A stretch of 55,959 bases of DNA, counting the filler, from Platydemus manokwari (lineage: Eukaryota), in assembly GCA_037951405.1 (NCBI GenBank). It is 5 parts of 5 records of this genome, joined end to end, with 100 filler letters (N's around TTAATTAATTAA, not from the genome) between each part and the next. Parts side by side here need not be neighbours in the genome. Positions count along the whole stretch, not along the records: positions 1 to 12,884 come from JBBMOY011925828.1; 4 more parts are not named here. The stretch is one strand, 5' to 3'. The notes beneath the pieces are model-generated. The model was not told the DNA's origin. It made no database searches and saw only the letters and a program-made list of their open reading frames with translations. The translations under genes were made by a program, and so were the position numbers. Shown here piece after piece: positions 1-13,168 of the stretch (its first letter is position 1; each line of letters begins with the position of its first letter).

Positions 1-563
1 GGTGCAAATCTAGATGTGTCCATTGACGAAATGGCAGCTCGAGCAGAGGTGAGCATTTGAGTCAGGTCCGCTGCGTTAGTTTCATTCAGTTTAATTGCAT
101 CAATTAAAATTGGGTTCATCGAGGGTCCTGAGTTTTTTACGGTCTGTGTGGCAAGTTTTCTAAATAAAATGGTATCCGAGATTACTTTATTGATGTCGTT
201 GCGCAGTTGTGGGAGAACTGGTGTGTGGTAAATTGCTGAATTGTTGATATGGTCGAGGATATGCTGAATAATGAAGAGGCCACAGTCGTGTGAGTTGAGT
301 TGAAGTGGCAGGTCTGGTAAGAAAGATTGGTTGAGGATAAGTCCATCTTTTAGAGCGCATAAGTTCTGGAAAAGGTTATCCAGTTTGTTCCAAAGGCATC
401 TTTGTTCTGCTGATAGAGATTTAGTTGCTGGGTCAATGTAGTATGATGACATTTTGAGGCGGTCTGCGATGTAGAGATTCCAGTGATTGTTGTTCCAGTG
501 GATTAGCCAGTAAGCATTTAGCCAAGTTGCAAGTTTCCTGAAGGGGAATGAAGGATGGACGCG
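1..563 (-). CDS. Ulp1/SENP-family (peptidase C48) cysteine protease domain; partial ORF running off the window edge, probably part of the mobile element
   Basis: Not in the ORF track. Manual minus-strand translation is open from at least ~563 to 1: RVHPSFPFRKLATWLNAYWLIHWNNNHWNLYIADRLKMSSYYIDP...LPLQLNSHDCGLFIIQHI...FA. It has catalytic His (HW, 483-485), Asp (YIDP, 432-434), oxyanion Gln and Cys in QxNxxDCG (Cys 282-284), matching the C48 pattern. Confidence 0.85.
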
Positions 564-1959
564 GATGCAACAGTTAGAACATGAATACTTGGAGGAAGTG
601 AACCGACAAGCTCACATAAAGCATCTACGTGAACGCTGTTTAGTCTACCAAGAGGCTTTCCAAAAAGGGAAACCATACCAATCTTCACTGGATCATTCAT
701 ACGCTCAGGCTAGTGGCACCAGCTCAAGCAGCTCCACTAATTATCCGAAACTGATTTATAAGTTAGAAGAAGCACGGACTCTTCTGACAGCTAAAATGAA
801 TAATTATATGCAACTCACTCCGTCGAGAGAGCAAACAGACACCTCCAATGGGTTACAAACCCCTTGTCTATCACCGATAGTCATGCGCGTAGAGAAAGCA
901 TACACATGCAACGAATACGAAGAAGAAGGTGACACTACCAAGGTAGTAGACACGTGGGAAATCGAAGAAATTCCCAAGGAAAAGACAAATGAAGCTTAAC
1001 AAAGTCTTACTCAAGTAATCACTCCCGAAAATGTGTTCGCGACAATCGAATTAACAACTGGGGAACAAGCAACGTTGACTCAGTTCTCTCGTAACTTAGT
1101 AAGGGAAGCTCAAAGGAACCCCCTAGACTAACAAATGATCAAGAGTATCTTAAATAATCACATTTACACTGCTATACCTACAGATGTATTGGCTGCCGCT
1201 GCACCAATACTGGTTGAACTCTTGGACAAAGGAGCCATTTACCGAAAAGAAGTACAGTTACTCCTACAACGAAATGGGCTAGCCATTCGGAGTCAACCGC
1301 AAGGAGCACCGATGCTCACGCTGCACATTAGAACCAGTCATCACGGGAACTGGCTCAAGATATACTCTTGCTTCTCACACGTTTGCAAATTAAGACAGGA
1401 TATCCGGCAGGAGAAATCAATCACGGAACCATTCATCATCACAAATCAATCAAATCCGGTAGATGATGACGAATATTTAGTTGACGTAGGCTGCTTACCA
1501 GACTTCGTCACAGTAGTAAAGGTACTAATAACGCCAGTAGAATCTAAACAATGGAGGAGAATACCCACATAGTCCAAGGCAGAAATCGAGCCAGCAACGG
1601 GAAGAGTAGAAACACAGTTATCAGTAGTTTTGGATGAGGACATCCAAGAAACCTCTCAATTCATGGAATACCAGGCAGGGTATGACCCACAACCATCTCC
1701 ACCGCCACCAGAGCCCGTTGTAGATGAGATCATAGAAATTGTGGACCTCGATTCACCAGCTATTGCAAGCAATCAGAACCATGAGGAATTCATACGGGAG
1801 ATAGAAAACCCTCCTCCAGAACCAGAGCCACCGATTGTGCCAACACAGGACATTAGTGAACCACCGCGGAAACGAAGAAACAGAGACACACAAGCCCACA
1901 CCAACAGTCAAGTACAAGCACAGTTGCTACGAGGACTGGCGGACGACACAACTATAAAT

Positions 1960-2445
1960 TCCAAGCAAGACATTCAACAATGTCTCTTGCGAATAGCAAA
2001 AGGGATTGATCCCTACAATCAACGCATAACAGAAGTAACCACCGAGGGTTACGAAAAACTACTCAGCAACATAAGCAGATACATGCCTAGGATTTGACAG
2101 ATCACACATGATCATCCCACCGTTGATTCAGAAAACGTGCTATGGGAAATTATTAAAGGTGGAATAACTGCATCAAGAGCCAAAATCATACTGATCAATT
2201 TGGCAAATAAAATCATGATGGCGTCATACGGGGACACATCACACTACCAAGAAACATTGCAACAGACGATCAAATTAGCACATCGAACCATAGGAAAATG
2301 GATTCAAACGCAAGGAGGATGGACCCAGTTTGGATACAGCGAGTCACTCACCACAGAAGGACTAGGTAACCTCAACAATAATGGGTTAATAAACACATTG
2401 GTAAAAGTTATTCTTATATGCAGCTTGATAGGAAAAACATCTATG
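1960..2445 (+). pseudogene. Bcl-2-like domain within the element polyprotein (one internal stop at 2095-2097)
   Basis: BH3-like IQQCLLRIAKGID (~1972-2010), BH1-like EIIKGGITASRAKIIL (~2146-2193; NWGR replaced by TASR) and a strong BH2 IGKWIQTQGGWTQF (W at 2299). These are followed by hydrophobic LINTLVKVILICSLIG. Confidence 0.75.
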
Positions 2446-4203
2446 CTCACCGCATATGATTGTTCGAATCCCAAGCTGTCCACAATGTATTCGTTAGTTG
2501 ATCTGTTCGAATGTCCAGCAGTCAATGTCAACAGCGTCAGACAAGGGCCACGGGATTCCTATTACTTGTATCAGGAATTAGAGTTCTATCGAACTACAAT
2601 CAAGGAATGTAGGGTCACGAAGGCTACATTCGAATACTATTGAGGAGTCTTTAGCCGCTCATCTGTACTAGATGCCAAACTCATTGCTCGCAGCATCACA
2701 ATCGCACCTAAAGCTTGCCAAGATGCTTTCGTACAAAGAAAACTCAGAGTCGACAGCGAAGACACTCTCACAGCAGAAGTAGGCGAGAGACTTGTTGAAA
2801 CAATCACACGCGGAGGCAAAATCGGAACAGACTGGACATGTATTGGACGAAGCAATGGAGATATTGTCTCTCATGTGGTAGAAATCGAAGACTACACCGT
2901 CGAATTAGTACAATATGAAGGGACATTCGACATGAAAACCGAAAACATGACTCAGTAGCCACATTGTGTATCCAAGTTTAATAGCTGCAATGTAGACACA
3001 GCCACATTAGTATACGAAGCCCGAAGAGCTTACTGTGACGTGGCACTACTCAAACAAGCATCGTTCATCGCAATCAACGGAAGCGCATGGGACCATCATA
3101 TTCCAGGCTGACACAAGGCCGACTAGATGGACGAATCGAAGAAGAGACATTGATCAAAAAGAGTGCTTCAATGGTACTAATATCCGACCAACAAACCGAC
3201 GCTATACGACGGATACGCGGACAGTCACTGGACAAATGTGGGACGCTAATGTACGAAACAAACTATCAAGGGATCTATGTGAGCCACCAGAGTGCTCGAG
3301 ATGCCAAAATTCTGAATGTCAAGGACGTCAAACTCACTACATACACCAACAATAAGGCCGATTACATATACCACGATCTGCTGCTACAATTAGCTACAAT
3401 TAGCAGAAACCCAGCATCATCAATGTAAAAGGGATCAAGAGATCGCACGAAACCGCATGGGCATAGTTATCACAAATCAGGACCTCGAAACACCCATTCT
3501 GATGGAAAATGGGGTGTACAGTCGAATCAGTGGTGAAGCATGGCACACTTACGAGTGTGAGCCAATTCAAGTCGCCATCGCAGACACTAAGAACTGCACA
3601 AGGGAGTTAGCAGTAATCTACAAGGAACAAACCAGGTACATTCAACCCATCACTCACATATTGCTTCCACCACAAAAGACAGAATGTAATCCACTGATTT
3701 CACCATTGTACAAGATTAATGAACAATGGGTGACTATACCGGATCGAAGACCACCTCGAAGTCCAGTACAACTGCTTAGGTTGGGAAACTCATTGACTAC
3801 TCGCGAATTCCAGTCCATATTTTCCACTGGAAAAAGGGGAGTCTACACCTCTAAGGACATTGCCGAAGCACGCAGAGCATTAGGATTTTACGAGCTCCGA
3901 GTCAGGGGAATAACAGAAATCATCAGGACAGTTTATCAGGATAGTGCAACCAGTCCGAACTATGATCACTTGTTCACAGTGGAACATCTCAAGAAAGCTG
4001 CTCACCATGTCACCTATCAAATATGGGGAGCCTTCGCAGCTTTTGGAACATTCATTACAAGATGCGTCGGCATTTATGTCATCTCCATAGGACTAAAAGT
4101 CATCATACAACGATTAGTATTCATGTATGACTTGTACAAACTGTTTGGCTGCTAATCAAAAATCATTTGCGGTATGTGCCCGATAATTGCCAACCGCCTC
4201 TTT
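2446..4203 (+). pseudogene. Chuvirus/Monjiviricetes-like fusion glycoprotein (env-like), disrupted by 3 stops and 2 frameshifts
   Basis: Ordered motifs typical of chuvirus-type glycoproteins: LTAYDC..SLVDLFEC; CRVTKATFEYY*GVFS (stop where the Cys of the CG motif is expected); CGTLMYETNYQGIYV; LTTYTNNKADYIY; QC...GVYSRISGEAWHTYECEPIQV; CTRELAV; PITHIL; CNPLISPLY; GVYT. The C-terminal hydrophobic block is IWGAFAAFGTFITRCVGIYVISIGLKVII...LFGC*SKIICGMC. Confidence 0.75.
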
Positions 4204-4679
4204 CATAAACATCATCACGGAAGAATGTACAAAATAGAAGAGATGATGAGAGAAATGAGACACGAAGTTCACTCTGCTCGACACGCCTCTTTTCGATCTG
4301 CCGTTTACGAGGAACAAGAAAAATACTACCCCTCCGACGAGGACAATGACAACGATAACGGCTATAGACCAAGTGGAACTGAGTCAATCATGATCGAGAA
4401 ACAGCCAACTCAACCCACGCTGCGGATGCAACAAACGATGAGAAACTACGAACAGGAACCATGCCTATCAACAGGCCAGAAACTATAACCGATATACCAG
4501 GAGAACAGTCACAGATACAGCCTCCTTCATACAGACAGTATTATACTCAGGTACAGTACCCAACTCAGGAATTACAAGTTATGGCCCAAACTGAACAAAT
4601 TACTGCGGAAGTAATGGTCAGAATGAACAGACAGAATCAACTGGGTTACAATGAATACTGCAACATAACCAACGAGTCA

Positions 4680-5180
4680 ACATGCACCGTCAAACTGACC
4701 CCGATCAGGATTAATAGACATCATGTCTTTGCATTAATTGATACGGGTGCTGATACTACAGTTATCTACCCTTGCATATTAAACGTACCAGAACTCATGA
4801 GTATCGGAAATACTAACGGAGTATCTATCATCGGAATCGATGGAAATGAACTACCACTCTTGGGATTACTCAGTTGCAAGATCCACCTCTGTGATCAGAC
4901 CATACCTATCGTAACAAGGGTTTCAAAGCTAAGCCCGTACGATTGCGTAATTGGAAAAGACACAATCCGACAGCTAAAGGACATCATGTACGAATGCGCT
5001 ACCGGTTCATTCATCAAAATGGTCAGAGACAGAAAAGCTCATCGAAACAATGTATATGCGGAACAGGAAATCATCATACCCCCTCGCTCAGAAACAATGT
5101 GTTATGTACAAACGAACCGGGCAGACGACGAAGAAGTTCTATTCGAACCCAGCAGTGCAATGATAGACCGCACGAATATA
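4680..5180 (+). pseudogene. Retropepsin (retroviral-type aspartic protease) plus post-protease linker, truncated before RT
   Basis: FALIDTGADTTVI (Asp codon 4740-4742), flap IIGIDG and CVIGKD. It is followed by VYAEQEIIIPPRSETMCYV, the kind of linker seen between PR and RT in metazoan Gypsy elements. Confidence 0.85.
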
Positions 5181-5700
5181 TGAATTTTTTATTTAAGTAC
5201 TTAAAAAGAATTCTAGTGGTTTGAAATTAAATATTAAATACACTTGAACTTCAAAGTCTCCTAAAATTTAACTATTTGAAAAACGGATCAAACTAGGTTG
5301 AATTGCAATTCTTTTGAAAATTTTCGAGGATCTCTTTCTCAACATTAGAAGAAAATTGAAAGATACTCTAAATTTTTACAATTATTTTATAAAAATAAGC
5401 AATGATATTATTAAATATGTTTGTAGTTAAGTAACTCAATTTATTGTTATAAAAAATTAAATTTAAAAACTTAAATAATCATATTGAGTGTTGTGCGTAG
5501 AATAGAAACGTGGTTTAAAAATTGTTTTATTCCTATTGGACATTCTAAAAAGTGAGATATTAACTGATAAATACTAATAAATTAAACGTCATAGTTATAT
5601 ATAAAATTAAGTTACAAAATTATCTAATGCGCGGAAATTTATTATTACAGAAGTAGGTCATTTCTTAACTTAAGCCAAAAATATTCTATATTGAACTAAA
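5179..5700 (+). repeat. Dispersed AT-rich repeat family A (copy 1; begins mid-element)
   Basis: TGAATTTTTTATTTAAGTACTTAA...TTTGAAATTAAATATTAAATACAC and the later ATGCGCGGAAATTT block recur at ~53560-54055 (+). Parts recur at ~36620-36870 (+) and ~46308-46640 (-). Confidence 0.75.
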
Positions 5701-6010
5701 AAAATAAAACTGATTGCAGTTGTTTAGTTGTTAAGTTGATTAATTATAGAACGTCAATATTAGAGTTTTGTTAGATTTATTGTAAGATTTCCATCAAATG
5801 ACGTAAATTCATTTTGATGTAAACCAAGCTATCAAAAATGGGACATTTTAAATTAATTTTGAATATATGTAGTTAATGATATTTGTGAAAAGATTATATT
5901 TTATTGCCAAATATGCTCTAGATGACATAAAAATAAAATTCAATTAGTTATAAATTAATCACTTTGTCAATTGTTTAAACATATTTTAGGATAATTTTTT
6001 AAAAATCCCC

Positions 6011-9000
6011 ATGGATATATCAAAGAGAAATTACTCAAACTTAGAGGATAAATTTTCCATGTAAACAAATATTAATTTTCATTAAAATTTAAGGAATAAA
6101 ATTTTTAGAAAGATCCCAGAAAAGCAAAATAGTAATCTCACAACTGCAACAATGCTTTTAGAAAAGCGTCGTGAGATGATTGAAATTGAAAATGCATTCA
6201 ATTCTCAAAAAGATGTAAGATGAAATTAGATATTAGCAAATTGTTATAAATGATTTAATTCATTTACATTGTTGGGAAATTTATTTTATTAATTTTAAGT
6301 TTTTTCTATCTGAAACTTGCCCATAAACAAATTACATAATATTTTCTAAGTGAATTTCAATATTGTTTAATTTGTATTAAATTAATTAATATAATTTGTA
6401 TTTCAAGTTATGTGGCTTTTCAAAACCATTCTTATTTCAATTTCATAGCGATTTTTTCGATGATATTTTGACAAAGTATTTGTCATTTTGAAATATTTGT
6501 TAAAATTGAATATATAACTATCAGAGAAATATACTATTTATAATAATAAGTCGCTAATTAACAACATTTATTTAATCAATTTGAATTATCTATTCAAAAT
6601 TTTGTAGAGTTTTTACAAAATAATAAACAGAAAAATGAAATTTCAACAAATTATATGAAATGAATTTTTATTTTTATCTATGTTATTGGAATATTTTTAT
6701 TCATAAATGAAATTCTCGAATCGAAATTGTAGGAATTTAAAATGAAAATGGAAAGTTTTCGACAAAGAAAACACGAATTGGACAGAAAAGAATTGGAATT
6801 ATCATCATCCTTATTGAAATTTAATAAATTTCTCAAAGAAAACGAATCGAAACGAAACAGAGCTCTCCATAAAACGTCAATCGAACTGGAAAATCAAAAG
6901 AACAAAGACAAGGAAATAATGGAGTTGGTTTGGTATTTGGTGTTTTAATATATCTTTAATATTCACTCCACAACAAAAAACAACAGTTTCAAACAAACAT
7001 TGGTTCTTTATCGAAATAAACAAGAAAAATTGAAATCGAAATTGGAACGATATCGATTGTATTTGACATTTTTCGAGAGTGTTATAGAGATAACAGAGGA
7101 ATTCACAGAAATCAAAGAAATCGTTGATCGTTATTCGACGCTTGCTAGTGCTCATGATGTAAGTTCAATGAAGGTGATTGGATCAATGTTTTGATGTCGA
7201 TGATTTCAGGATTTATTGGAGCGAAATAAAAATAATCAAATAGCTGTCAATGAGGAGAAACAAAATATGATGCAATTAAAAGAAGTTTTAATTTTTGCAT
7301 TTGTTTTAATTGATTGATTTTTATAATTTAATTTTAAATTTAAAATTTCATTCCGTGATAGAAGGGGGAGATAATATCATTTTAAAATCATTTTTCTATA
7401 CCAGTTCAAGACATGAATGATGTTAATATATAATGCCAAAAAATTTGACTTACAACTCATCGATCAATCTTTTGAGTTGTTTTAATTTTATCAAGAACCT
7501 CATAACATTCAATATTGATATTTTGTTGATCTAGTTTGATTTGATTAGATTTGATATTATTTTCAAAATTATTATTGCTAGACGCTTTTATTTTATAAAA
7601 CGCGCATTGAAAATGAATTGAAAAATCACGACACCAGATTATATTTTCATTACAATGATTTAAACAAATTAATATTTTATATTTTTTCAAATTTCAATTC
7701 ATTATAAATCCTCACATCTTCCATTTCTTTAAAATCTTTGATTTTCTCTGAATTCTTAATTATATCTGTGTCGAATTTTCTAGATAAATTTATCTATGTA
7801 AACATTTTTTTCGCATCTACTTTCTATTTTCTTTATATCACTTCTACATATTCTCTTTATCTTTTATACAACTATGCTGTATCCTTCTTACATCTTTTCT
7901 ATAGGTTCCTCCTCCTCTCCTATACTTCCATGCCACAGATAATCTCAGAATCGAATTCAAATGCGTGGTCGCCATGTAAGCCCCTACTATTTAATAAAGA
8001 ATGCATTGAAACCTAAGTGAAAAGTCAAGCCACAAAAATATATTTTTATTTCAATTATTAAAACAAATAAATATTTCATAAAAATCTGATTTTAAATTTT
8101 TTCAAATTTCAATTTATTATAAATCCTCACAATTATCATTAATATTGCAGCTATGTAGGAGCGTGTTTGGAATTATATTCTGGATTTTATTAATTTGTCT
8201 TTCCTATAATTTTGATTATTAATATTAAAATTACAATTTCAAGTTAGTCTTCATAACTATCTATTTAAACAAACGATTTAATACACAACGCTCATTCGTT
8301 GAATGGATGGCTCCATTTGACGAACCGATATTAATCCCTGAATTGAAAATCTTTCTTCAATACGTTCTGATCGTCCTTCCATTAATAAGAACCATGAGTA
8401 GAATGGACTACAAGACGATCTCTCCTTGGACAGTTTGTTGAAATTGTCAATGGTTTGATTTGAAAAATATTGAGTAAATGAAATCTGTCAATTGATCATG
8501 AGTCCATCATGAGGATGATTATATCAAAGATAAGTGAGATTTCGAATTGGTGAAGATAAAATATTTTATAATTAAATTTTATAAAACATTTTTCAAAGAT
8601 TAAAAAAAACTTGGAATAAAATTTGTTATCTCATAAAAAAACTGAACAATAAATTATATTTAATTAATTGGATAAAACTAAAATTAGATCAACATCTCTA
8701 TTCCAGCTGAGGTCGCGAAATAATAAACAAATAATCAATCATTAAATAAAATCAAAATATTCTCGCTCAATTTTGTTTGTACTTCAATGTTTTCATTTTT
8801 CTTTTGACTGTAGAATAGCAATGGGCAGATTATTCGATGTAATAATCGGCAAGGAATTTTACAATTAGAATATGACCGTCTTCAATCGATAAGTTTGGAA
8901 AAATCAGCAGAATGGAATTCCTTAATCAGTGAAGTGGCCCAAAAAACTTTGGAATATGGGAAAATAAAAATGTTAGATAATTTGATTTTTATGTCCAATA

Positions 9001-10675
9001 ATTATGTATTCAATACATTATTTATCAAATTTATTCAATATTTTCCATATTATTTGAGATTAGAATATTGTTTCATGTCAATTATGTTAATATAATTAAG
9101 ATGAGTCGAATATTGGAACAACTAGTATTGAGATAATAATTGTTGACTCAATTATTTATAAATTTAAAATTATGTCATAATTTCTGACATTTATTTATTT
9201 TATTATTCTTGAACAATTGATCAGTATTGTTGATGGTGTGAGATTATTTAAAAATACGATAAATCATTAAAATTTACATAAGATTAAAATTAAAAAATTA
9301 AAAGATATTTTAAAAAAATATATTAAAAATAATTATACTATATTGATATTTATAAAATGATCTTGTTTAAAAAATTACTATTAACCTCAATAAAAAAAAA
9401 TTAAAATTACTAAAAGTAATTTTAAATAAAAAAATAAAGATATAATATTAAAATATGTGTGCATTTTTAGATTTAAAAAGAGAAGATAAATCAGATGGAA
9501 ATAAATTTTAATATTTTAAAATTTGTTTAAAATGGATGTATTATAAATATATATTTTTTGTTCTGTTGAAAACATGTCTTTTGATTTGAATATTAAAACG
9601 AAGAAGTTTTAGCAACTAACAATATTTATAAGAGTCTTGCTAAGCAATACTGTTAAATTTTAAAATTTGATTGAAATGTGATGTGATAAATATTTGTGCT
9701 GTTAAACAAACATGACTTCTGATTTAAATCACTTGAATGAAGAAATGTTGTCAACTAACAGGTGGTATGAAATGAATGTGTTTGTTATAATTTTGTTTTA
9801 TTGGAACTCTCATTTCTTGTTCATTTTTAACACATCTGTATCAAATGTGAGTTAAATAAAGTTAAAAGAAAAGTTAAAAATGAAAACGTTATACAATCTT
9901 TTGTTTTAATATAACATTACAATTAAGGTTCAATCTTCAGTTTCAATCATTTGTTTTTTCCTCTTTAAGATTCCACAGTTTTTATGATTAATTTTTCTAA
10001 TAATTCAAAAAATAAAAACTCCTTAAACTTAATTTAACATTTTGCTGATAATGAAAACGATGGTTATATTCAGCATGATGAACATCGGCTAAACAGATAT
10101 ATAATCTCGCCATATCTTTAAATGTATTTCTATGAAATTATGAATATATTTAGAGGAATACAGCCATTATAATCAGTATTTATTTTCATAAAGTTTCATT
10201 CAACCTGATAACAAAACATAGAAAAAATAATTAGAAATTCACTTATCAAAATATTTCCATACATTCTTAATAACAAGTTTTGAGTGTTTCCTTTCACAAA
10301 CTCTTACTTGGCGCATAAACATATCCTCTCATTTTCCAACGTGTTTTATTAAAATTACACCCAATTTACCATTATTACTTAGTTTTCTCTACCTTTTATA
10401 AGGTTTTTAATTCATTTTTTTGAAATTTTTACGTCTAAAGCTCATGTTTATTTTCAGGGCAACAAGTAATCTTTATTTTATATCTCAGAAGTTCTTGGGC
10501 AATAAGATCAATTCATTAAATATTGTCGATACATTGAAACAATTGGATAAAGTTTGATTATTCAGCTGAAAATTTTATTTATTGTTGATATTTTTATTAG
10601 ATCAATATTTTTATTGAAGATCTCCAGTATATTTTGAAAGAAGTCAATAACGATGACGAATTAAGCGAAATATAA
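6011..10675 (+). CDS. CFAP73: Cilia/flagella-associated coiled-coil protein CFAP73/CCDC42 (DUF4200 family), 8 coding exons
   Basis: GT-AG exons 6011-6060, 6109-6214, 6733-6923, 6987-7158, 7210-7284, 8814-8971, 10458-10551 and 10601-10675 splice into one frame. The product is MDISKRN...TATMLLEKRREM...LLKFNKFLKENESKRNRA...EFTEIKEIVDRYSTL...KTLEYGKIKMATSNLY...DTLKQLDKINIFIEDL...*. An AATAAA lies at ~10723. Confidence 0.88.
7690..8131 (+). repeat. Dispersed repeat family B (~440 bp, bounded by ~27-bp direct repeats), in CFAP73 intron 5
   Basis: AATTTCAATT(C/T)ATTATAAATCCTCACA at both ends, with a pyrimidine-rich body and core AATCGAATYCAAATGCGTGGTCGCCATGTAAGCC. Other copies are at ~49340-49766 (+), ~44760-44916 (+, partial) and ~21190-21960 (-, several partial). 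The ORF 7738-8016 is a by-product. Confidence 0.75.
9265..9770 (+). repeat. Dispersed repeat family C, in CFAP73 intron 6
   Basis: GATTAAAATT...TTTATAAAATGATCTTG...GAAGA(T/C)AAATCAGATGGAAATAAATTT...CATG(T/A)CTTTTGATTT...CAACTAACA recurs at ~51215-51545. Confidence 0.7.
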
Positions 10676-12758
10676 ATCGTTACTTTACTGCTGTGAAGTT
10701 TTCTTCCAGAATTGTTGTTTTGAATAAATGGGAGATTTATGATTTGTTGAGATTGTTTAAATTAATTACAATTTTATAATTTGTAGTCGATCTTTTTTGC
10801 GTTTCTCAATTAAAACTGATATAAGATTCACAACTAGTTTATATTCATTCATTTAATGCTGGGTAATTTATACGTTTATGAAACGAATGATTAGTTTACT
10901 GAGATCTAGTGAAATGTTCTTTGATTATTTATAAATCCATTTTCTTAATTGTGCGCGCATAAATTTGATACTGAAATATCATAACCATATATATTCTTAG
11001 TTTTGATTGGTTATTATGGTTTACAATTTTTGGATTGAATCTCAGAAACTAATAAAAGATTAAGAATCTAAAATTTCTGATCGACTTATACCAATATTAA
11101 TAGTTTTTCGATTACTTTTACCACTAACTTAAACCAAAATAAACTTAAAAGTTTCCTGGCTAACTGGTTTATTGCTCCTAAAGGTACTGATTTTGAGTAT
11201 CATCTGTCTTCTGCTATTATTGGTTTTGAGTTCGAGGATATTGTCTTGTGTTCGTTATTTCGTTCTCCGTTTCTTCTAAAATGTTCATTCCGTTATGAAA
11301 CCTTTGCTTTTCAAAAATTCCGCCCACAAAAATTATTTTTTGCAATTTGAAAATGAGCTGGCTTTCATATCCAATTTATATTCCAAACTGCAGATACTTG
11401 TTGAGATATTTCTCTATTTTCGTAATTTCTTCATTAATTTCGTCAATAAATAGACCAATCTCTTTTATTTTTAAGCACATAAACAATGAAAAAAGTTCAC
11501 CGTTTGATCTTAAAATGCCTTGGGAAAAATATAATTTCTCTATATTTAAAATAATAAAAAGATATCCTTATATAAATAGCCTAGTCTAAGTATTTTCGTC
11601 ACTTAAATTCTCTCTTGTTTTAAAGCCTCATATGAATTTTTATAATATAGATGTACCCATTTTTTGTTGATATTTCAAAGTTCAGATTCACAATTTATTT
11701 GGTTTTTAAAACCCTGATCTTTAAATGAGCTCTATTTTATTGGAACCACATTTTAATTTTTGAAATATCGATTTTGAAGCTCTCTCTCTTAAAATATTTT
11801 ATATATCCCGACAGATTAATGGACTACAAATCACGATCATCAAATTGTTGGTTTTGAGCTTGTAATGTTTTTTATCTTAATTCTTATCAGACTCAATAAT
11901 ATTCCTATTGTGGATCACAGCTGCCTTGATCAGTCTCTACAAGTCCTAATCAAGCCCAAGGTACAAACTATAAAACCTTAATCTTTCTATTTTCAACTCC
12001 CAATCAATACAATGTGGAGATAGTACGATTGGTAACAATGATCAAAGCTTAATAAACTTAGTCAGTCTCAAATCATCAAAATCTATATAATTTATCAATC
12101 AACAACTAATAAACAAACTATTAACTATGGTAAGATTTATTATGTTCTAAAACACTGATGCACAAATTATACAATAAGCAAGTAATTAATTTTAATACTA
12201 CAAATACTACAAATACTTTTAAACGCAAAACGGCTACCTTACAAATTCTGAAATAAAGCTACGATTGAGAAACTTCAACTAAAGAAGCTGAACTGATAAT
12301 CTCAAAAGGAGTTTTGAGATACAACTCAATAATAAAATGATATATGATACTTTACATGATAGAGATAGTGGTTTTACATTATAAATCGAACTCACTTTGA
12401 ATTCGAATAAATCGGAAAATATAATGGCTGCTGTAATCGCTAACTAGACTAAGGAATCGAAGGCTTAATGACAAATACGATCCAAGATTCTGCAATTGAC
12501 TAGCTTCTGGTTATTTCGTATGACGGCTTACACAATCTAGTGGTTTCTCAATGTATGAACGAGAGCGAAGTTATGATTTTTTCAACTCTTATATATACCT
12601 CTTTTAGGTGGCGCTTATAATAGTCCCGATTATAATATATTTCGTTACATTTTTATAAATATCCCATATTTTTAATGAATATTGCTACAATAATATTGTC
12701 GGGATAATACCCATGCAGGCTGCAAGCCTATAAACTACATAACAATCCCATAAACTAC

Positions 12759-12801
<43 letters not shown>

Positions 12802-13168
12802 AAACCAAAAACCCACATTAATTAAAATGTAGGCGTGTGGGCGGAATGATATTAATAATAGATATAAAATTTTTTCGACAAATTNNNNNNNNNNNNNNNN
12901 NNNNNNNNNNNNNNNNNNNNNNNNNNNNTTAATTAATTAANNNNNNNNNNNNNNNNNNNNNNNNNNNNNNNNNNNNNNNNNNNNTATTTATTACTTTAGT
13001 TTTTTATTATTAGAAATTTTTAAGTGAAATCTTTTAAAATTAAATAAATCAGAGAATAAAATTTATTTTAAAAATCACATTAAAAATAATTTTAACGAAT
13101 ATAATTTCAGATAAATATTAAAATTTTCTATTTATTGCTTGCTTTCATTAGTGACATTATTAAGTTTA

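What the first reader, a model, noticed from the sequence alone, without database searches (positions are those of the whole stretch)
1..5180. Virus-like giant retroelement: Bcl-2 + chuvirus-type envelope glycoprotein + retropepsin in one polyprotein, with an adjacent Ulp1 protease
Seen: one intronless, co-oriented reading frame of ~1500 codons, broken only by point stops and about three frameshifts, carries Bcl-2-like, fusion-glycoprotein and aspartic protease domains in that order. Established: retroviral and errantiviral env genes are normally separate ORFs downstream of pol; chuvirus glycoproteins have been captured by BEL/Pao elements in insects; planarians carry giant Gypsy elements (Burro) with accessory domains (recalled, not verified here). 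Inference: this is a relic of an enveloped, potentially infectious retroelement lineage. It would have its env upstream of PR inside the polyprotein and carry its own apoptosis and SUMO modulators, more like a large DNA virus. I do not know of this combination and order being described. No gag, RT, IN or LTR is visible in the window.
Basis: partly seen in the sequence, partly recalled or inferred. Interest (0 to 1): 0.93.

Follow-up and report, generated by a model that had tools for sequence, protein, structure and literature searches.

The report
Decayed Burro-type giant retroelement fragment
This is a dead, truncated piece of a giant Gypsy-like retroelement whose polyprotein runs Bcl-2-like, then envelope glycoprotein, then protease; that layout was published in 2019 for the planarian "Burro" elements, so it is real but not new.

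Summary
A GC-rich block (about 43% GC, bases 1 to about 5183) sits in AT-rich DNA (20-28% GC). On its + strand it carries the remnant of one co-oriented polyprotein.

- **Envelope:** a Monjiviricetes/chuvirus-type fusion glycoprotein, with a best-piece Pfam E-value of 1e-36.
- **Protease:** a retropepsin scoring above Pfam's cut-off, with its catalytic D-T-G (Asp-Thr-Gly) motif intact.
- **Bcl-2-like stretch:** lies just upstream of the envelope. Support is marginal but specific.
- **Damage:** at least 3 frameshifts and at least 5 in-frame stops. Both ends are cut off, and the window holds no gag, RT, IN or LTR.
- **Ulp1 (C48) remnant:** real, but it is on the opposite strand and lacks its N-terminal half. 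It meets the polyprotein head-to-head where strand composition flips. Nothing ties it to the element.

Uninterrupted relatives (up to 4844 aa) have envelope, protease, RT, RNase H and integrase in one ORF, so the order is not chance nesting.

Arkhipova & Yushenova 2019 (PMC6431247) already describe BCL2, env (mononegavirus-like) and PR in frame between gag and pol in Burro/GYPSM1. The novelty claim therefore fails. Neither the host species nor the exact Burro family could be determined.

The parts
1..617 (-). Remnant of a Ulp1-type (clan CE, family C48) cysteine protease ORF. Only the C-terminal half of the catalytic domain and about 85 further residues remain. It is open through the left edge of the piece and cut off on its N-terminal side.
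   Evidence: Pfam PF02902 scores 27.3 bits against a cut-off of 20.7, matching profile 87-182/217. Top PDB hits are yeast Ulp1 1euv and SENP8, with the His, Asp and Cys positions aligned. The frame is open for 199 codons. The + strand GC skew is +0.24 to +0.45 here, against negative values after about base 600.
600..5183 (+). Remnant of one retroelement polyprotein gene, given as one broken gene. It has at least 3 frameshifts and at least 5 in-frame stops. It is truncated at the 5' side (no gag) and at the 3' side (ends between PR and where relatives have RT).
   Evidence: See (ORF layout; counts and outer bounds of homology, 1060/1138 to 5180; abrupt GC drop at about 5183; strand-composition switch at about 600).
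1138..1520 (+). Conserved region of unknown fold. It is shared with two long relatives, where it lies between the gag zinc knuckle and env. This is the place where Burro is reported to have a SUMO-like domain, but no such domain was detected here.
   Evidence: blastp to P0007 residues 419-547 (E 1e-6) and P0152 residues 240-369 (E 1e-5). No Pfam or NCBIfam hit. The AlphaFold2 model has pLDDT 37 and is unusable.
2131..2325 (+). Bcl-2-like region, matching the C-terminal two thirds of the Pfam Bcl-2 profile. A possible N-terminal part further upstream is not supported by any search.
   Evidence: PF00452 gives E 0.08 at 14 bits, below the cut-off. The homologous place in P0008 gives E 1e-3 and in P0004 E 0.2. 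A small profile of relatives matches the window piece at E 1e-6. The profile against the PDB hits nearly only Bcl-2 family chains, E 0.025-0.45.
2398..2454 (+). Hydrophobic segment between the Bcl-2-like region and the envelope ectodomain. It is inferred to be an internal signal or signal-anchor sequence.
   Evidence: The Kyte-Doolittle 19-residue window mean is 1.69. The segment lies immediately before the match to profile positions 4-82 of PF24664.
2395..4155 (+). Envelope gene region: a Monjiviricetes (chuvirus/mononegavirus) type fusion glycoprotein. It is broken by stops and frameshifts and is given as one part.
   Evidence: PF24664 hits in three pieces, colinear along the profile, best E 1e-36. 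There are 477 library hits, 137 of them at E<=1e-10. Named stand-alone relatives are the glycoproteins of Wufeng shrew chuvirus 2 and 6 and an endogenous glycoprotein of the beetle Zophobas morio.
4033..4128 (+). C-terminal transmembrane anchor of the envelope protein.
   Evidence: Hydropathy reaches 1.93 over 19 residues. It lies at the end of the PF24664 match.
4698..4979 (+). Retropepsin (family A2 aspartic protease) domain with its D-T-G motif present.
   Evidence: PF00077 scores 23.0 bits against a cut-off of 20.7, and PF09668 gives E 9e-5. blastp to the PR region of P0152 (E 1e-18), P0009 and P0001. The motif is seen in the translation.
5184..12884 (.). AT-rich flank (20-28% GC): host DNA, not part of the element.
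   Evidence: No element homology lies beyond 5180.
6742..6945 (+). Exon-like ORF of a host DUF4200 (CCDC42/CFAP73-type coiled-coil) gene.
   Evidence: PF13863 gives E 3.4e-13 at 50.4 bits against a cut-off of 29.7, matching profile 24-85/119.

Best explanation
Bases about 600-5183 are a dead fragment, truncated at both ends, of a Burro-type giant Gypsy-like (Metaviridae-like) LTR retroelement. The host genome is AT-rich, most likely that of a dugesiid planarian.

**How intact members work.** One very long ORF encodes gag, accessory modules, a Bcl-2-like module, a chuvirus/mononegavirus-type fusion glycoprotein, one or more retropepsins, then RT, RNase H and integrase.

**Inferred topology (not shown).**
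1. The gag and Bcl-2-like parts are made in the cytosol.
2. The hydrophobic segment after the Bcl-2-like module acts as an internal signal and carries the glycoprotein ectodomain into the ER lumen.
3. The C-terminal anchor stops transfer, so PR-RT-IN are again cytosolic.
4. Signal peptidase and the element's protease would then separate the parts.

**This copy.** It cannot do any of this. It lacks gag, RT, IN and LTRs, and it carries at least 3 frameshifts and at least 5 stops.

**The Ulp1 remnant.** The piece at 1-617 on the other strand is most likely part of another mobile element or a rearranged piece that abuts the fragment. It is probably not one of the element's genes.
For: - The domain order in the window is Bcl-2-like, env, PR.
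- The same order occurs in uninterrupted relatives. P0001 (2627 aa) has env, RVP, RVT_1, RT_RNaseH, Integrase_H2C2 and rve. P0152 (3003 aa) and P0154 (4844 aa) are alike. P0007 has zf-CCHC, then the 1138-1520-like region, then env, then four PR copies.
- The Gypsy-type domain set (RT_RNaseH, Integrase_H2C2, Ty3 peptidase) appears.
- The Burro architecture and the planarian A/T bias are published (PMC6431247; PMC11410931: >70% A/T).
- Hydrophobic segments flank the ectodomain.
- Break counts come, the abrupt 3' end, and the strand-composition flip at about 600.
Against: - The host species was not identified. Exact look-ups of a host ORF and of an element ORF found nothing.
- No Burro-1 to Burro-4 or GYPSM1 sequence was available, so family membership rests on architecture, not on alignment.
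- The nearest library proteins are only 31-37% identical in env.
- The SUMO-like domain reported upstream of BCL2 in Burro was not detected.
- The Bcl-2 hit is below Pfam's cut-off.
- The topology model is inference only.
Confidence: 0.82

Rival explanations
1. The Ulp1 protease is an accessory gene of this element lineage, encoded antisense. Together with a SUMO-like domain and the Bcl-2-like module, it would form a host-manipulation set.
For: The Ulp1 remnant has the same non-host GC content (41-44%) as the element and directly abuts it. Burro is reported to carry a SUMO-like domain. The catalytic His, Asp and Cys positions are kept.
Against: - It is on the opposite strand and lacks the N-terminal half of its domain at the junction.
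- There is a sharp strand-composition switch at the junction.
- It has no similarity to any of the 156 relatives' proteins.
- It is not mentioned in the published Burro description.
- Ulp1 is a common passenger domain of Ginger1 and Mutator transposases in animals.
Confidence: 0.1
2. The layout is chance nesting or misassembly. In this reading a non-retroviral chuvirus glycoprotein insertion (EVE) happens to lie beside an unrelated retroelement protease and a cellular Bcl-2 pseudogene.
For: Solo chuvirus-derived glycoproteins are common in arthropod genomes. The window copy is so broken that continuity cannot be shown from the window alone.
Against: - At least nine independent long proteins in public data carry env and PR in one uninterrupted ORF. 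Several continue into RT-RH-IN.
- The Bcl-2-like stretch plus the env N-terminus is one conserved block in P0004, P0008, P0002 and P0015.
- GC content and strand composition are uniform across about 600-5183.
Confidence: 0.03
3. This is a BEL/Pao element with a captured chuvirus glycoprotein, of the mosquito 'Anakin' kind.
For: It has the same class of glycoprotein.
Against: The relatives' pol has Gypsy-type domains (RT_RNaseH, Integrase_H2C2, Ty3 peptidase) and no BEL/Pao peptidase family. Here env lies upstream of PR inside the polyprotein. In the Anakin description the polyprotein runs GAG-PR-RT-RH-INT and the glycoprotein is not placed inside it; the BEL/Pao precedents cited there have env downstream of the polyprotein.
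Confidence: 0.04

Closest known systems
Burro (Burro-1 to -4; GYPSM1) giant Gypsy-like LTR retrotransposons of Schmidtea mediterranea, and the Burro-like element of Dugesia/Girardia tigrina (Grohme et al. 2018; Jurka 2007; Arkhipova & Yushenova 2019, PMC6431247)
   Same: Both have a BCL2-like motif, then an env with hits to mononegavirus fusion glycoproteins, then PR, all in one frame between gag and pol. Both sit in an AT-rich host genome. Decaying copies with stops and frameshifts are reported for Dugesia japonica.
   Different: The window holds only the middle of such an element. The SUMO-like domain was not detected. No sequence-level comparison with a named Burro family was possible. An antisense Ulp1 remnant abuts the fragment, and this is not part of the published description.
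Anakin: Pao (BEL/Pao) retroelements of mosquitoes with a captured chuvirus glycoprotein (Dezordi et al. 2020, PMC7642597)
   Same: An LTR retroelement that uses a Jingchuvirales-type glycoprotein as its envelope.
   Different: It belongs to a different superfamily (BEL/Pao, not Gypsy). Its env is not embedded between gag and PR, and no Bcl-2-like module is reported.
Glycoproteins of exogenous chuviruses (Jingchuvirales), such as those named
   Same: They fall in the same Pfam family, PF24664, are 28-30% identical over the C-terminal third, and have the same C-terminal anchor.
   Different: They are stand-alone proteins of about 650-700 aa from RNA viruses. Here the glycoprotein is a domain of a retroelement polyprotein.
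Ginger1 and Mutator DNA transposases with a C-terminal Ulp1 domain (Bao, Kapitonov & Jurka 2010, PMC2836005)
   Same: A C48 domain carried by a mobile element in animals. This is a possible origin of the 1-617 remnant.
   Different: No integrase or transposase part is visible next to the remnant in the window. Membership is untested.

Membership tests
Burro-type giant Gypsy-like LTR retroelement | Fusion glycoprotein (env) encoded in frame inside the polyprotein, upstream of PR | tested here: met
   PF24664 pieces are followed by RVP on the same strand. Relatives have both in single ORFs.
Burro-type giant Gypsy-like LTR retroelement | BCL2-like motif directly N-terminal of env | tested here: met
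   Support is marginal but specific: (PDB hits nearly all Bcl-2 family, E 0.025-0.45). It is below Pfam's cut-off.
Burro-type giant Gypsy-like LTR retroelement | Ubi2/SUMO-like domain upstream of BCL2 | tested here: inconclusive
   No Pfam or NCBIfam hit in the window or in P0007/P0152. The model has pLDDT 37.
Burro-type giant Gypsy-like LTR retroelement | Gag with CCHC knuckles at the N-terminus; dUTPase-RT-RH-IN after PR; LTRs | tested here: inconclusive
   All are absent from the window because the fragment is cut at both ends. Relatives have zf-CCHC (P0007) and RT-RH-IN (P0001, P0152, P0154).
Burro-type giant Gypsy-like LTR retroelement | Nucleotide or protein identity to a curated Burro/GYPSM1 entry; host in Dugesiidae | not testable with these tools
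   No repeat library or planarian genome is on hand. Exact look-ups found nothing.
Monjiviricetes fusion glycoprotein (PF24664) | Score above the curated cut-off; colinear coverage of the profile; C-terminal membrane anchor | tested here: met
   126.5 bits against a cut-off of 27. Profile positions 4-82, 245-329 and 363-583 are matched in order. The anchor is at 4033-4128.
Retropepsin, family A2 (PF00077) | Score above the cut-off and a catalytic Asp-Thr-Gly | tested here: met
   23.0 bits against a cut-off of 20.7. The motif is seen in the translation.
Bcl-2 family (PF00452) | Pfam gathering score | tested here: not met
   14 bits against a cut-off of 31.4. The best relative, P0008, scores 20.1 bits. 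It works like or looks like Bcl-2 only at profile level. The fold was not confirmed (pLDDT 40).
Ulp1/SENP peptidase C48 (PF02902) | Score above the cut-off; catalytic His, Asp and Cys; complete domain | tested here: met
   27.3 bits against a cut-off of 20.7. The catalytic positions align to 1euv. The domain is incomplete: only profile positions 87-182 of 217 are matched.
BEL/Pao with captured chuvirus env (Anakin) | BEL/Pao-type pol, with env not embedded between gag and PR | tested here: not met
   Relatives carry Gypsy-type domains and have env upstream of PR.

The most novel reading that the evidence does not exclude
The fragment could belong to a so far undescribed Burro-like family in which a Ulp1-type SUMO protease is a true accessory gene, encoded antisense. 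Paired with the lineage's SUMO-like and Bcl-2-like modules, it would give the element a fuller host-manipulation set than has been published.
Probability: 0.08. Interest if true: 0.45.

Novelty: already known. Interest (0 to 1): 0.15.

Why it matters
The architecture is unusual among retroelements: env lies inside the polyprotein between gag and pol, next to an apoptosis-regulator-like module. It supports the view that Burro-type elements are integrated proviruses. That point was made in 2019, however, and this copy is a broken fragment that adds no new feature.

The search did add two small things:
- Public metagenome and MAG data hold many uninterrupted relatives with the same env, PR, RT, RNase H, IN order. 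Some have several protease copies. The lineage is therefore broader than the few described planarian elements.
- At least one relative is filed under a bacterial MAG, which is an annotation error worth knowing about.

Tried and rejected
**Searches that found nothing**
- Direct PDB searches with the two pieces around the Bcl-2-like region.
- The search for homologous proteins with the Bcl-2/env-N piece and with the Ulp1 piece: no hits within the tool's length band. This says nothing about longer relatives.
- NCBIfam.
- Exact look-ups of a host ORF and of the largest env ORF, the latter with flank 1 so that no further element DNA was drawn: not on record, so the source genome stays unknown.
- LTR or other long repeats, tRNA genes and Rfam families in the window.

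**Structure predictions that failed**
- The Bcl-2/env-N piece with five relatives gave pLDDT 40. The 1138-1520 piece with two relatives gave pLDDT 37.
- Both models are too poor for a fold search, so none was run.

**A script result I discarded**
- A first break count that let tblastn run through stops overcounted. I replaced it with a count over stop-free, homology-supported pieces.

**Other negative results**
- The possible N-terminal half of the Bcl-2-like module showed no similarity to relatives.
- Cluster look-ups gave no host names for the closest relatives.

- I stopped doing this in the report.


Full report
**What is there**

The piece has two compositional parts. Bases 1 to about 5183 are 41-45% GC. 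From there to 12884 the DNA is 20-28% GC. The change is abrupt, and it falls just after the last protease-side coding piece. The piece contains no N.

**The + strand polyprotein remnant**

From about base 600 to 5183 the + strand carries a chain of stop-free pieces, all co-oriented.

- **Envelope.** Pfam places three of these pieces on the Monjiviricetes fusion glycoprotein family PF24664. They match profile positions 4-82, 245-329 and 363-583, in that order. The E-values are 5e-4, 2e-4 and 1e-36. Two further small pieces between them also match relatives.
- **Hydrophobic segments.** The glycoprotein region ends in a strongly hydrophobic anchor at 4033-4128. A second hydrophobic segment at 2398-2454 precedes it.
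- **Protease.** Downstream lies a retropepsin: RVP at 23.0 bits against a cut-off of 20.7. Its Asp-Thr-Gly motif is present.

**The Bcl-2-like stretch**

Immediately upstream of the first hydrophobic segment lies a stretch that Pfam matches to Bcl-2 only weakly (14 bits against a cut-off of 31.4, E 0.08). Three things raise this above noise:

- The stretch and the env N-terminus form one conserved block in relatives P0004, P0008, P0002 and P0015.
- The same weak Bcl-2 match appears at the homologous place in P0008 (E 1e-3) and P0004 (E 0.2).
- A profile of the window piece with five relatives returns 63 PDB sequences at E<=1. All but a few designed proteins are Bcl-2 family members (BFL-1/A1 at 0.025, Bcl-xL at about 0.1), all in the same register.

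A fold-level test failed, because the model had pLDDT 40. I therefore call the module Bcl-2-like with marginal statistical support.

**State of the copy**

Between the outer bounds of homology (1138 and 5180) the gene has at least 3 frameshifts and at least 5 in-frame stops. No gag, RT, RNase H, integrase, LTR, tRNA gene or Rfam family is in the window. In relatives RT begins roughly 150 residues after the point where the window copy stops. The copy is therefore truncated at its 3' side, and also at its 5' side.

**Relatives**

I searched 1.84 billion representative proteins with the largest env piece. The search gave 477 hits, 137 of them at E<=1e-10.

- **The nine best hits** are 31-37% identical and are long proteins.
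  - P0001 (2627 aa) reads env, RVP, RVT_1, RT_RNaseH, Integrase_H2C2 and rve in one ORF.
  - P0152 (3003 aa) and P0154 (4844 aa) have the same order, with several protease copies.
  - P0007 has a gag zinc knuckle, then a region homologous to window 1138-1520, then env, then four protease copies.
- **What this shows.** The order is a lineage trait, not chance nesting. The pol domains are of Ty3/Gypsy type.
- **Weaker hits** are stand-alone glycoproteins of about 650-700 aa. The named ones are two shrew-associated chuvirus glycoproteins and an endogenous beetle glycoprotein.

**The Ulp1 piece**

On the minus strand, bases 1-617 are open for about 200 codons and run off the left edge.

- **Family.** Pfam C48 scores above its cut-off but covers only the C-terminal half of the domain. 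Yeast Ulp1 and SENP8 are the best solved relatives, and the catalytic positions are kept.
- **Junction.** On the + strand, GC skew is +0.24 to +0.45 and AT skew is negative up to about base 600. Both reverse beyond it. Two coding units therefore meet head-to-head there, and the Ulp1 unit is cut at the junction.
- **No link to the element.** The piece matches none of the relatives' proteins and is absent from the published Burro description. Ulp1 domains ride on Ginger1 and Mutator transposases in animals.

I read it as a neighbouring or nested fragment of another element. The alternative, that it is an accessory gene, I put at about 10%.

**Comparison with what is known**

Arkhipova & Yushenova (2019, PMC6431247) describe Burro/GYPSM1 of Schmidtea mediterranea and a Burro-like element of Dugesia tigrina.

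- They report a polyprotein of about 4900-5100 aa with gag, accessory domains, a SUMO-like domain and BCL2.
- Next comes an env region with hits to arthropod and fish mononegavirus fusion glycoproteins, then PR, dUTPase and RT-RH-IN.
- They note that Dugesia japonica holds decaying fragments with stops and frameshifts.

Planarian genomes are more than 70% A/T, which fits the flank here. The window is thus a fragment of a known kind of element. The mosquito Anakin elements share the glycoprotein class, but they are BEL/Pao elements with a different layout.

**How it works**

These steps are inference for intact members only. One ORF is translated. The hydrophobic segment after the Bcl-2-like module would act as an internal signal, so that the glycoprotein ectodomain enters the ER lumen. 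The C-terminal anchor would return the chain to the cytosol for PR-RT-IN. Host signal peptidase and the element's protease would then separate the parts. What is shown is the domain order and the positions of the hydrophobic segments. The topology and the cleavages are inferred. The copy in this window is inert.

- The host species and the Burro family could not be determined.
- I did not fetch the DNA of the long intact relatives' contigs. They may be near-complete proviruses of animals, and I could not tell whether the bar on fetching animal viruses covers them.

**Verdict**

The novelty claim is refuted by the literature. Interest is low.

Noticed in passing
window 6742-6945 (+), possibly further exons to about 9100: An exon-like ORF of a host DUF4200 (CCDC42/CFAP73-type) coiled-coil gene, Pfam E 3e-13. 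Neighbouring + strand ORFs look like further coiled-coil exons but gave no Pfam hit. The element fragment lies about 1.5 kb upstream of it.
   Followed up: partly
protein P0001 (NCBI HBK71150.1): A 2627-aa env-PR-RT-RNaseH-IN polyprotein is filed as a hypothetical protein of a Flavobacteriaceae MAG. It is clearly a eukaryotic retroelement on a misbinned 9-kb contig.
   Followed up: no
proteins P0154, P0007, P0004, P0005: Relatives carry several tandem aspartic protease domains after env: up to seven matched stretches in P0154 and four in P0007. P0154 also has about 1700 residues beyond integrase, with another protease-like stretch.
   Followed up: no
protein P0025 (791 aa): A gene model that joins a Bcl-2-like/env fragment of this lineage to an ion-transport domain (PF00520). 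It is probably a chimeric prediction across an element insertion.
   Followed up: no
window 7658-7725 and 8073-8140; 12759-12799: An AT-rich 68-nt direct repeat pair (81% identity, 415 nt apart) and an (ATA)n microsatellite of 13.7 units lie in the host flank.
   Followed up: no
window about 600-1135 (+): The first stop-free piece of the + strand unit (144 aa) has coding-like strand composition. It has no homologue among the relatives and no family hit, so its place in the polyprotein is unproven.
   Followed up: partly
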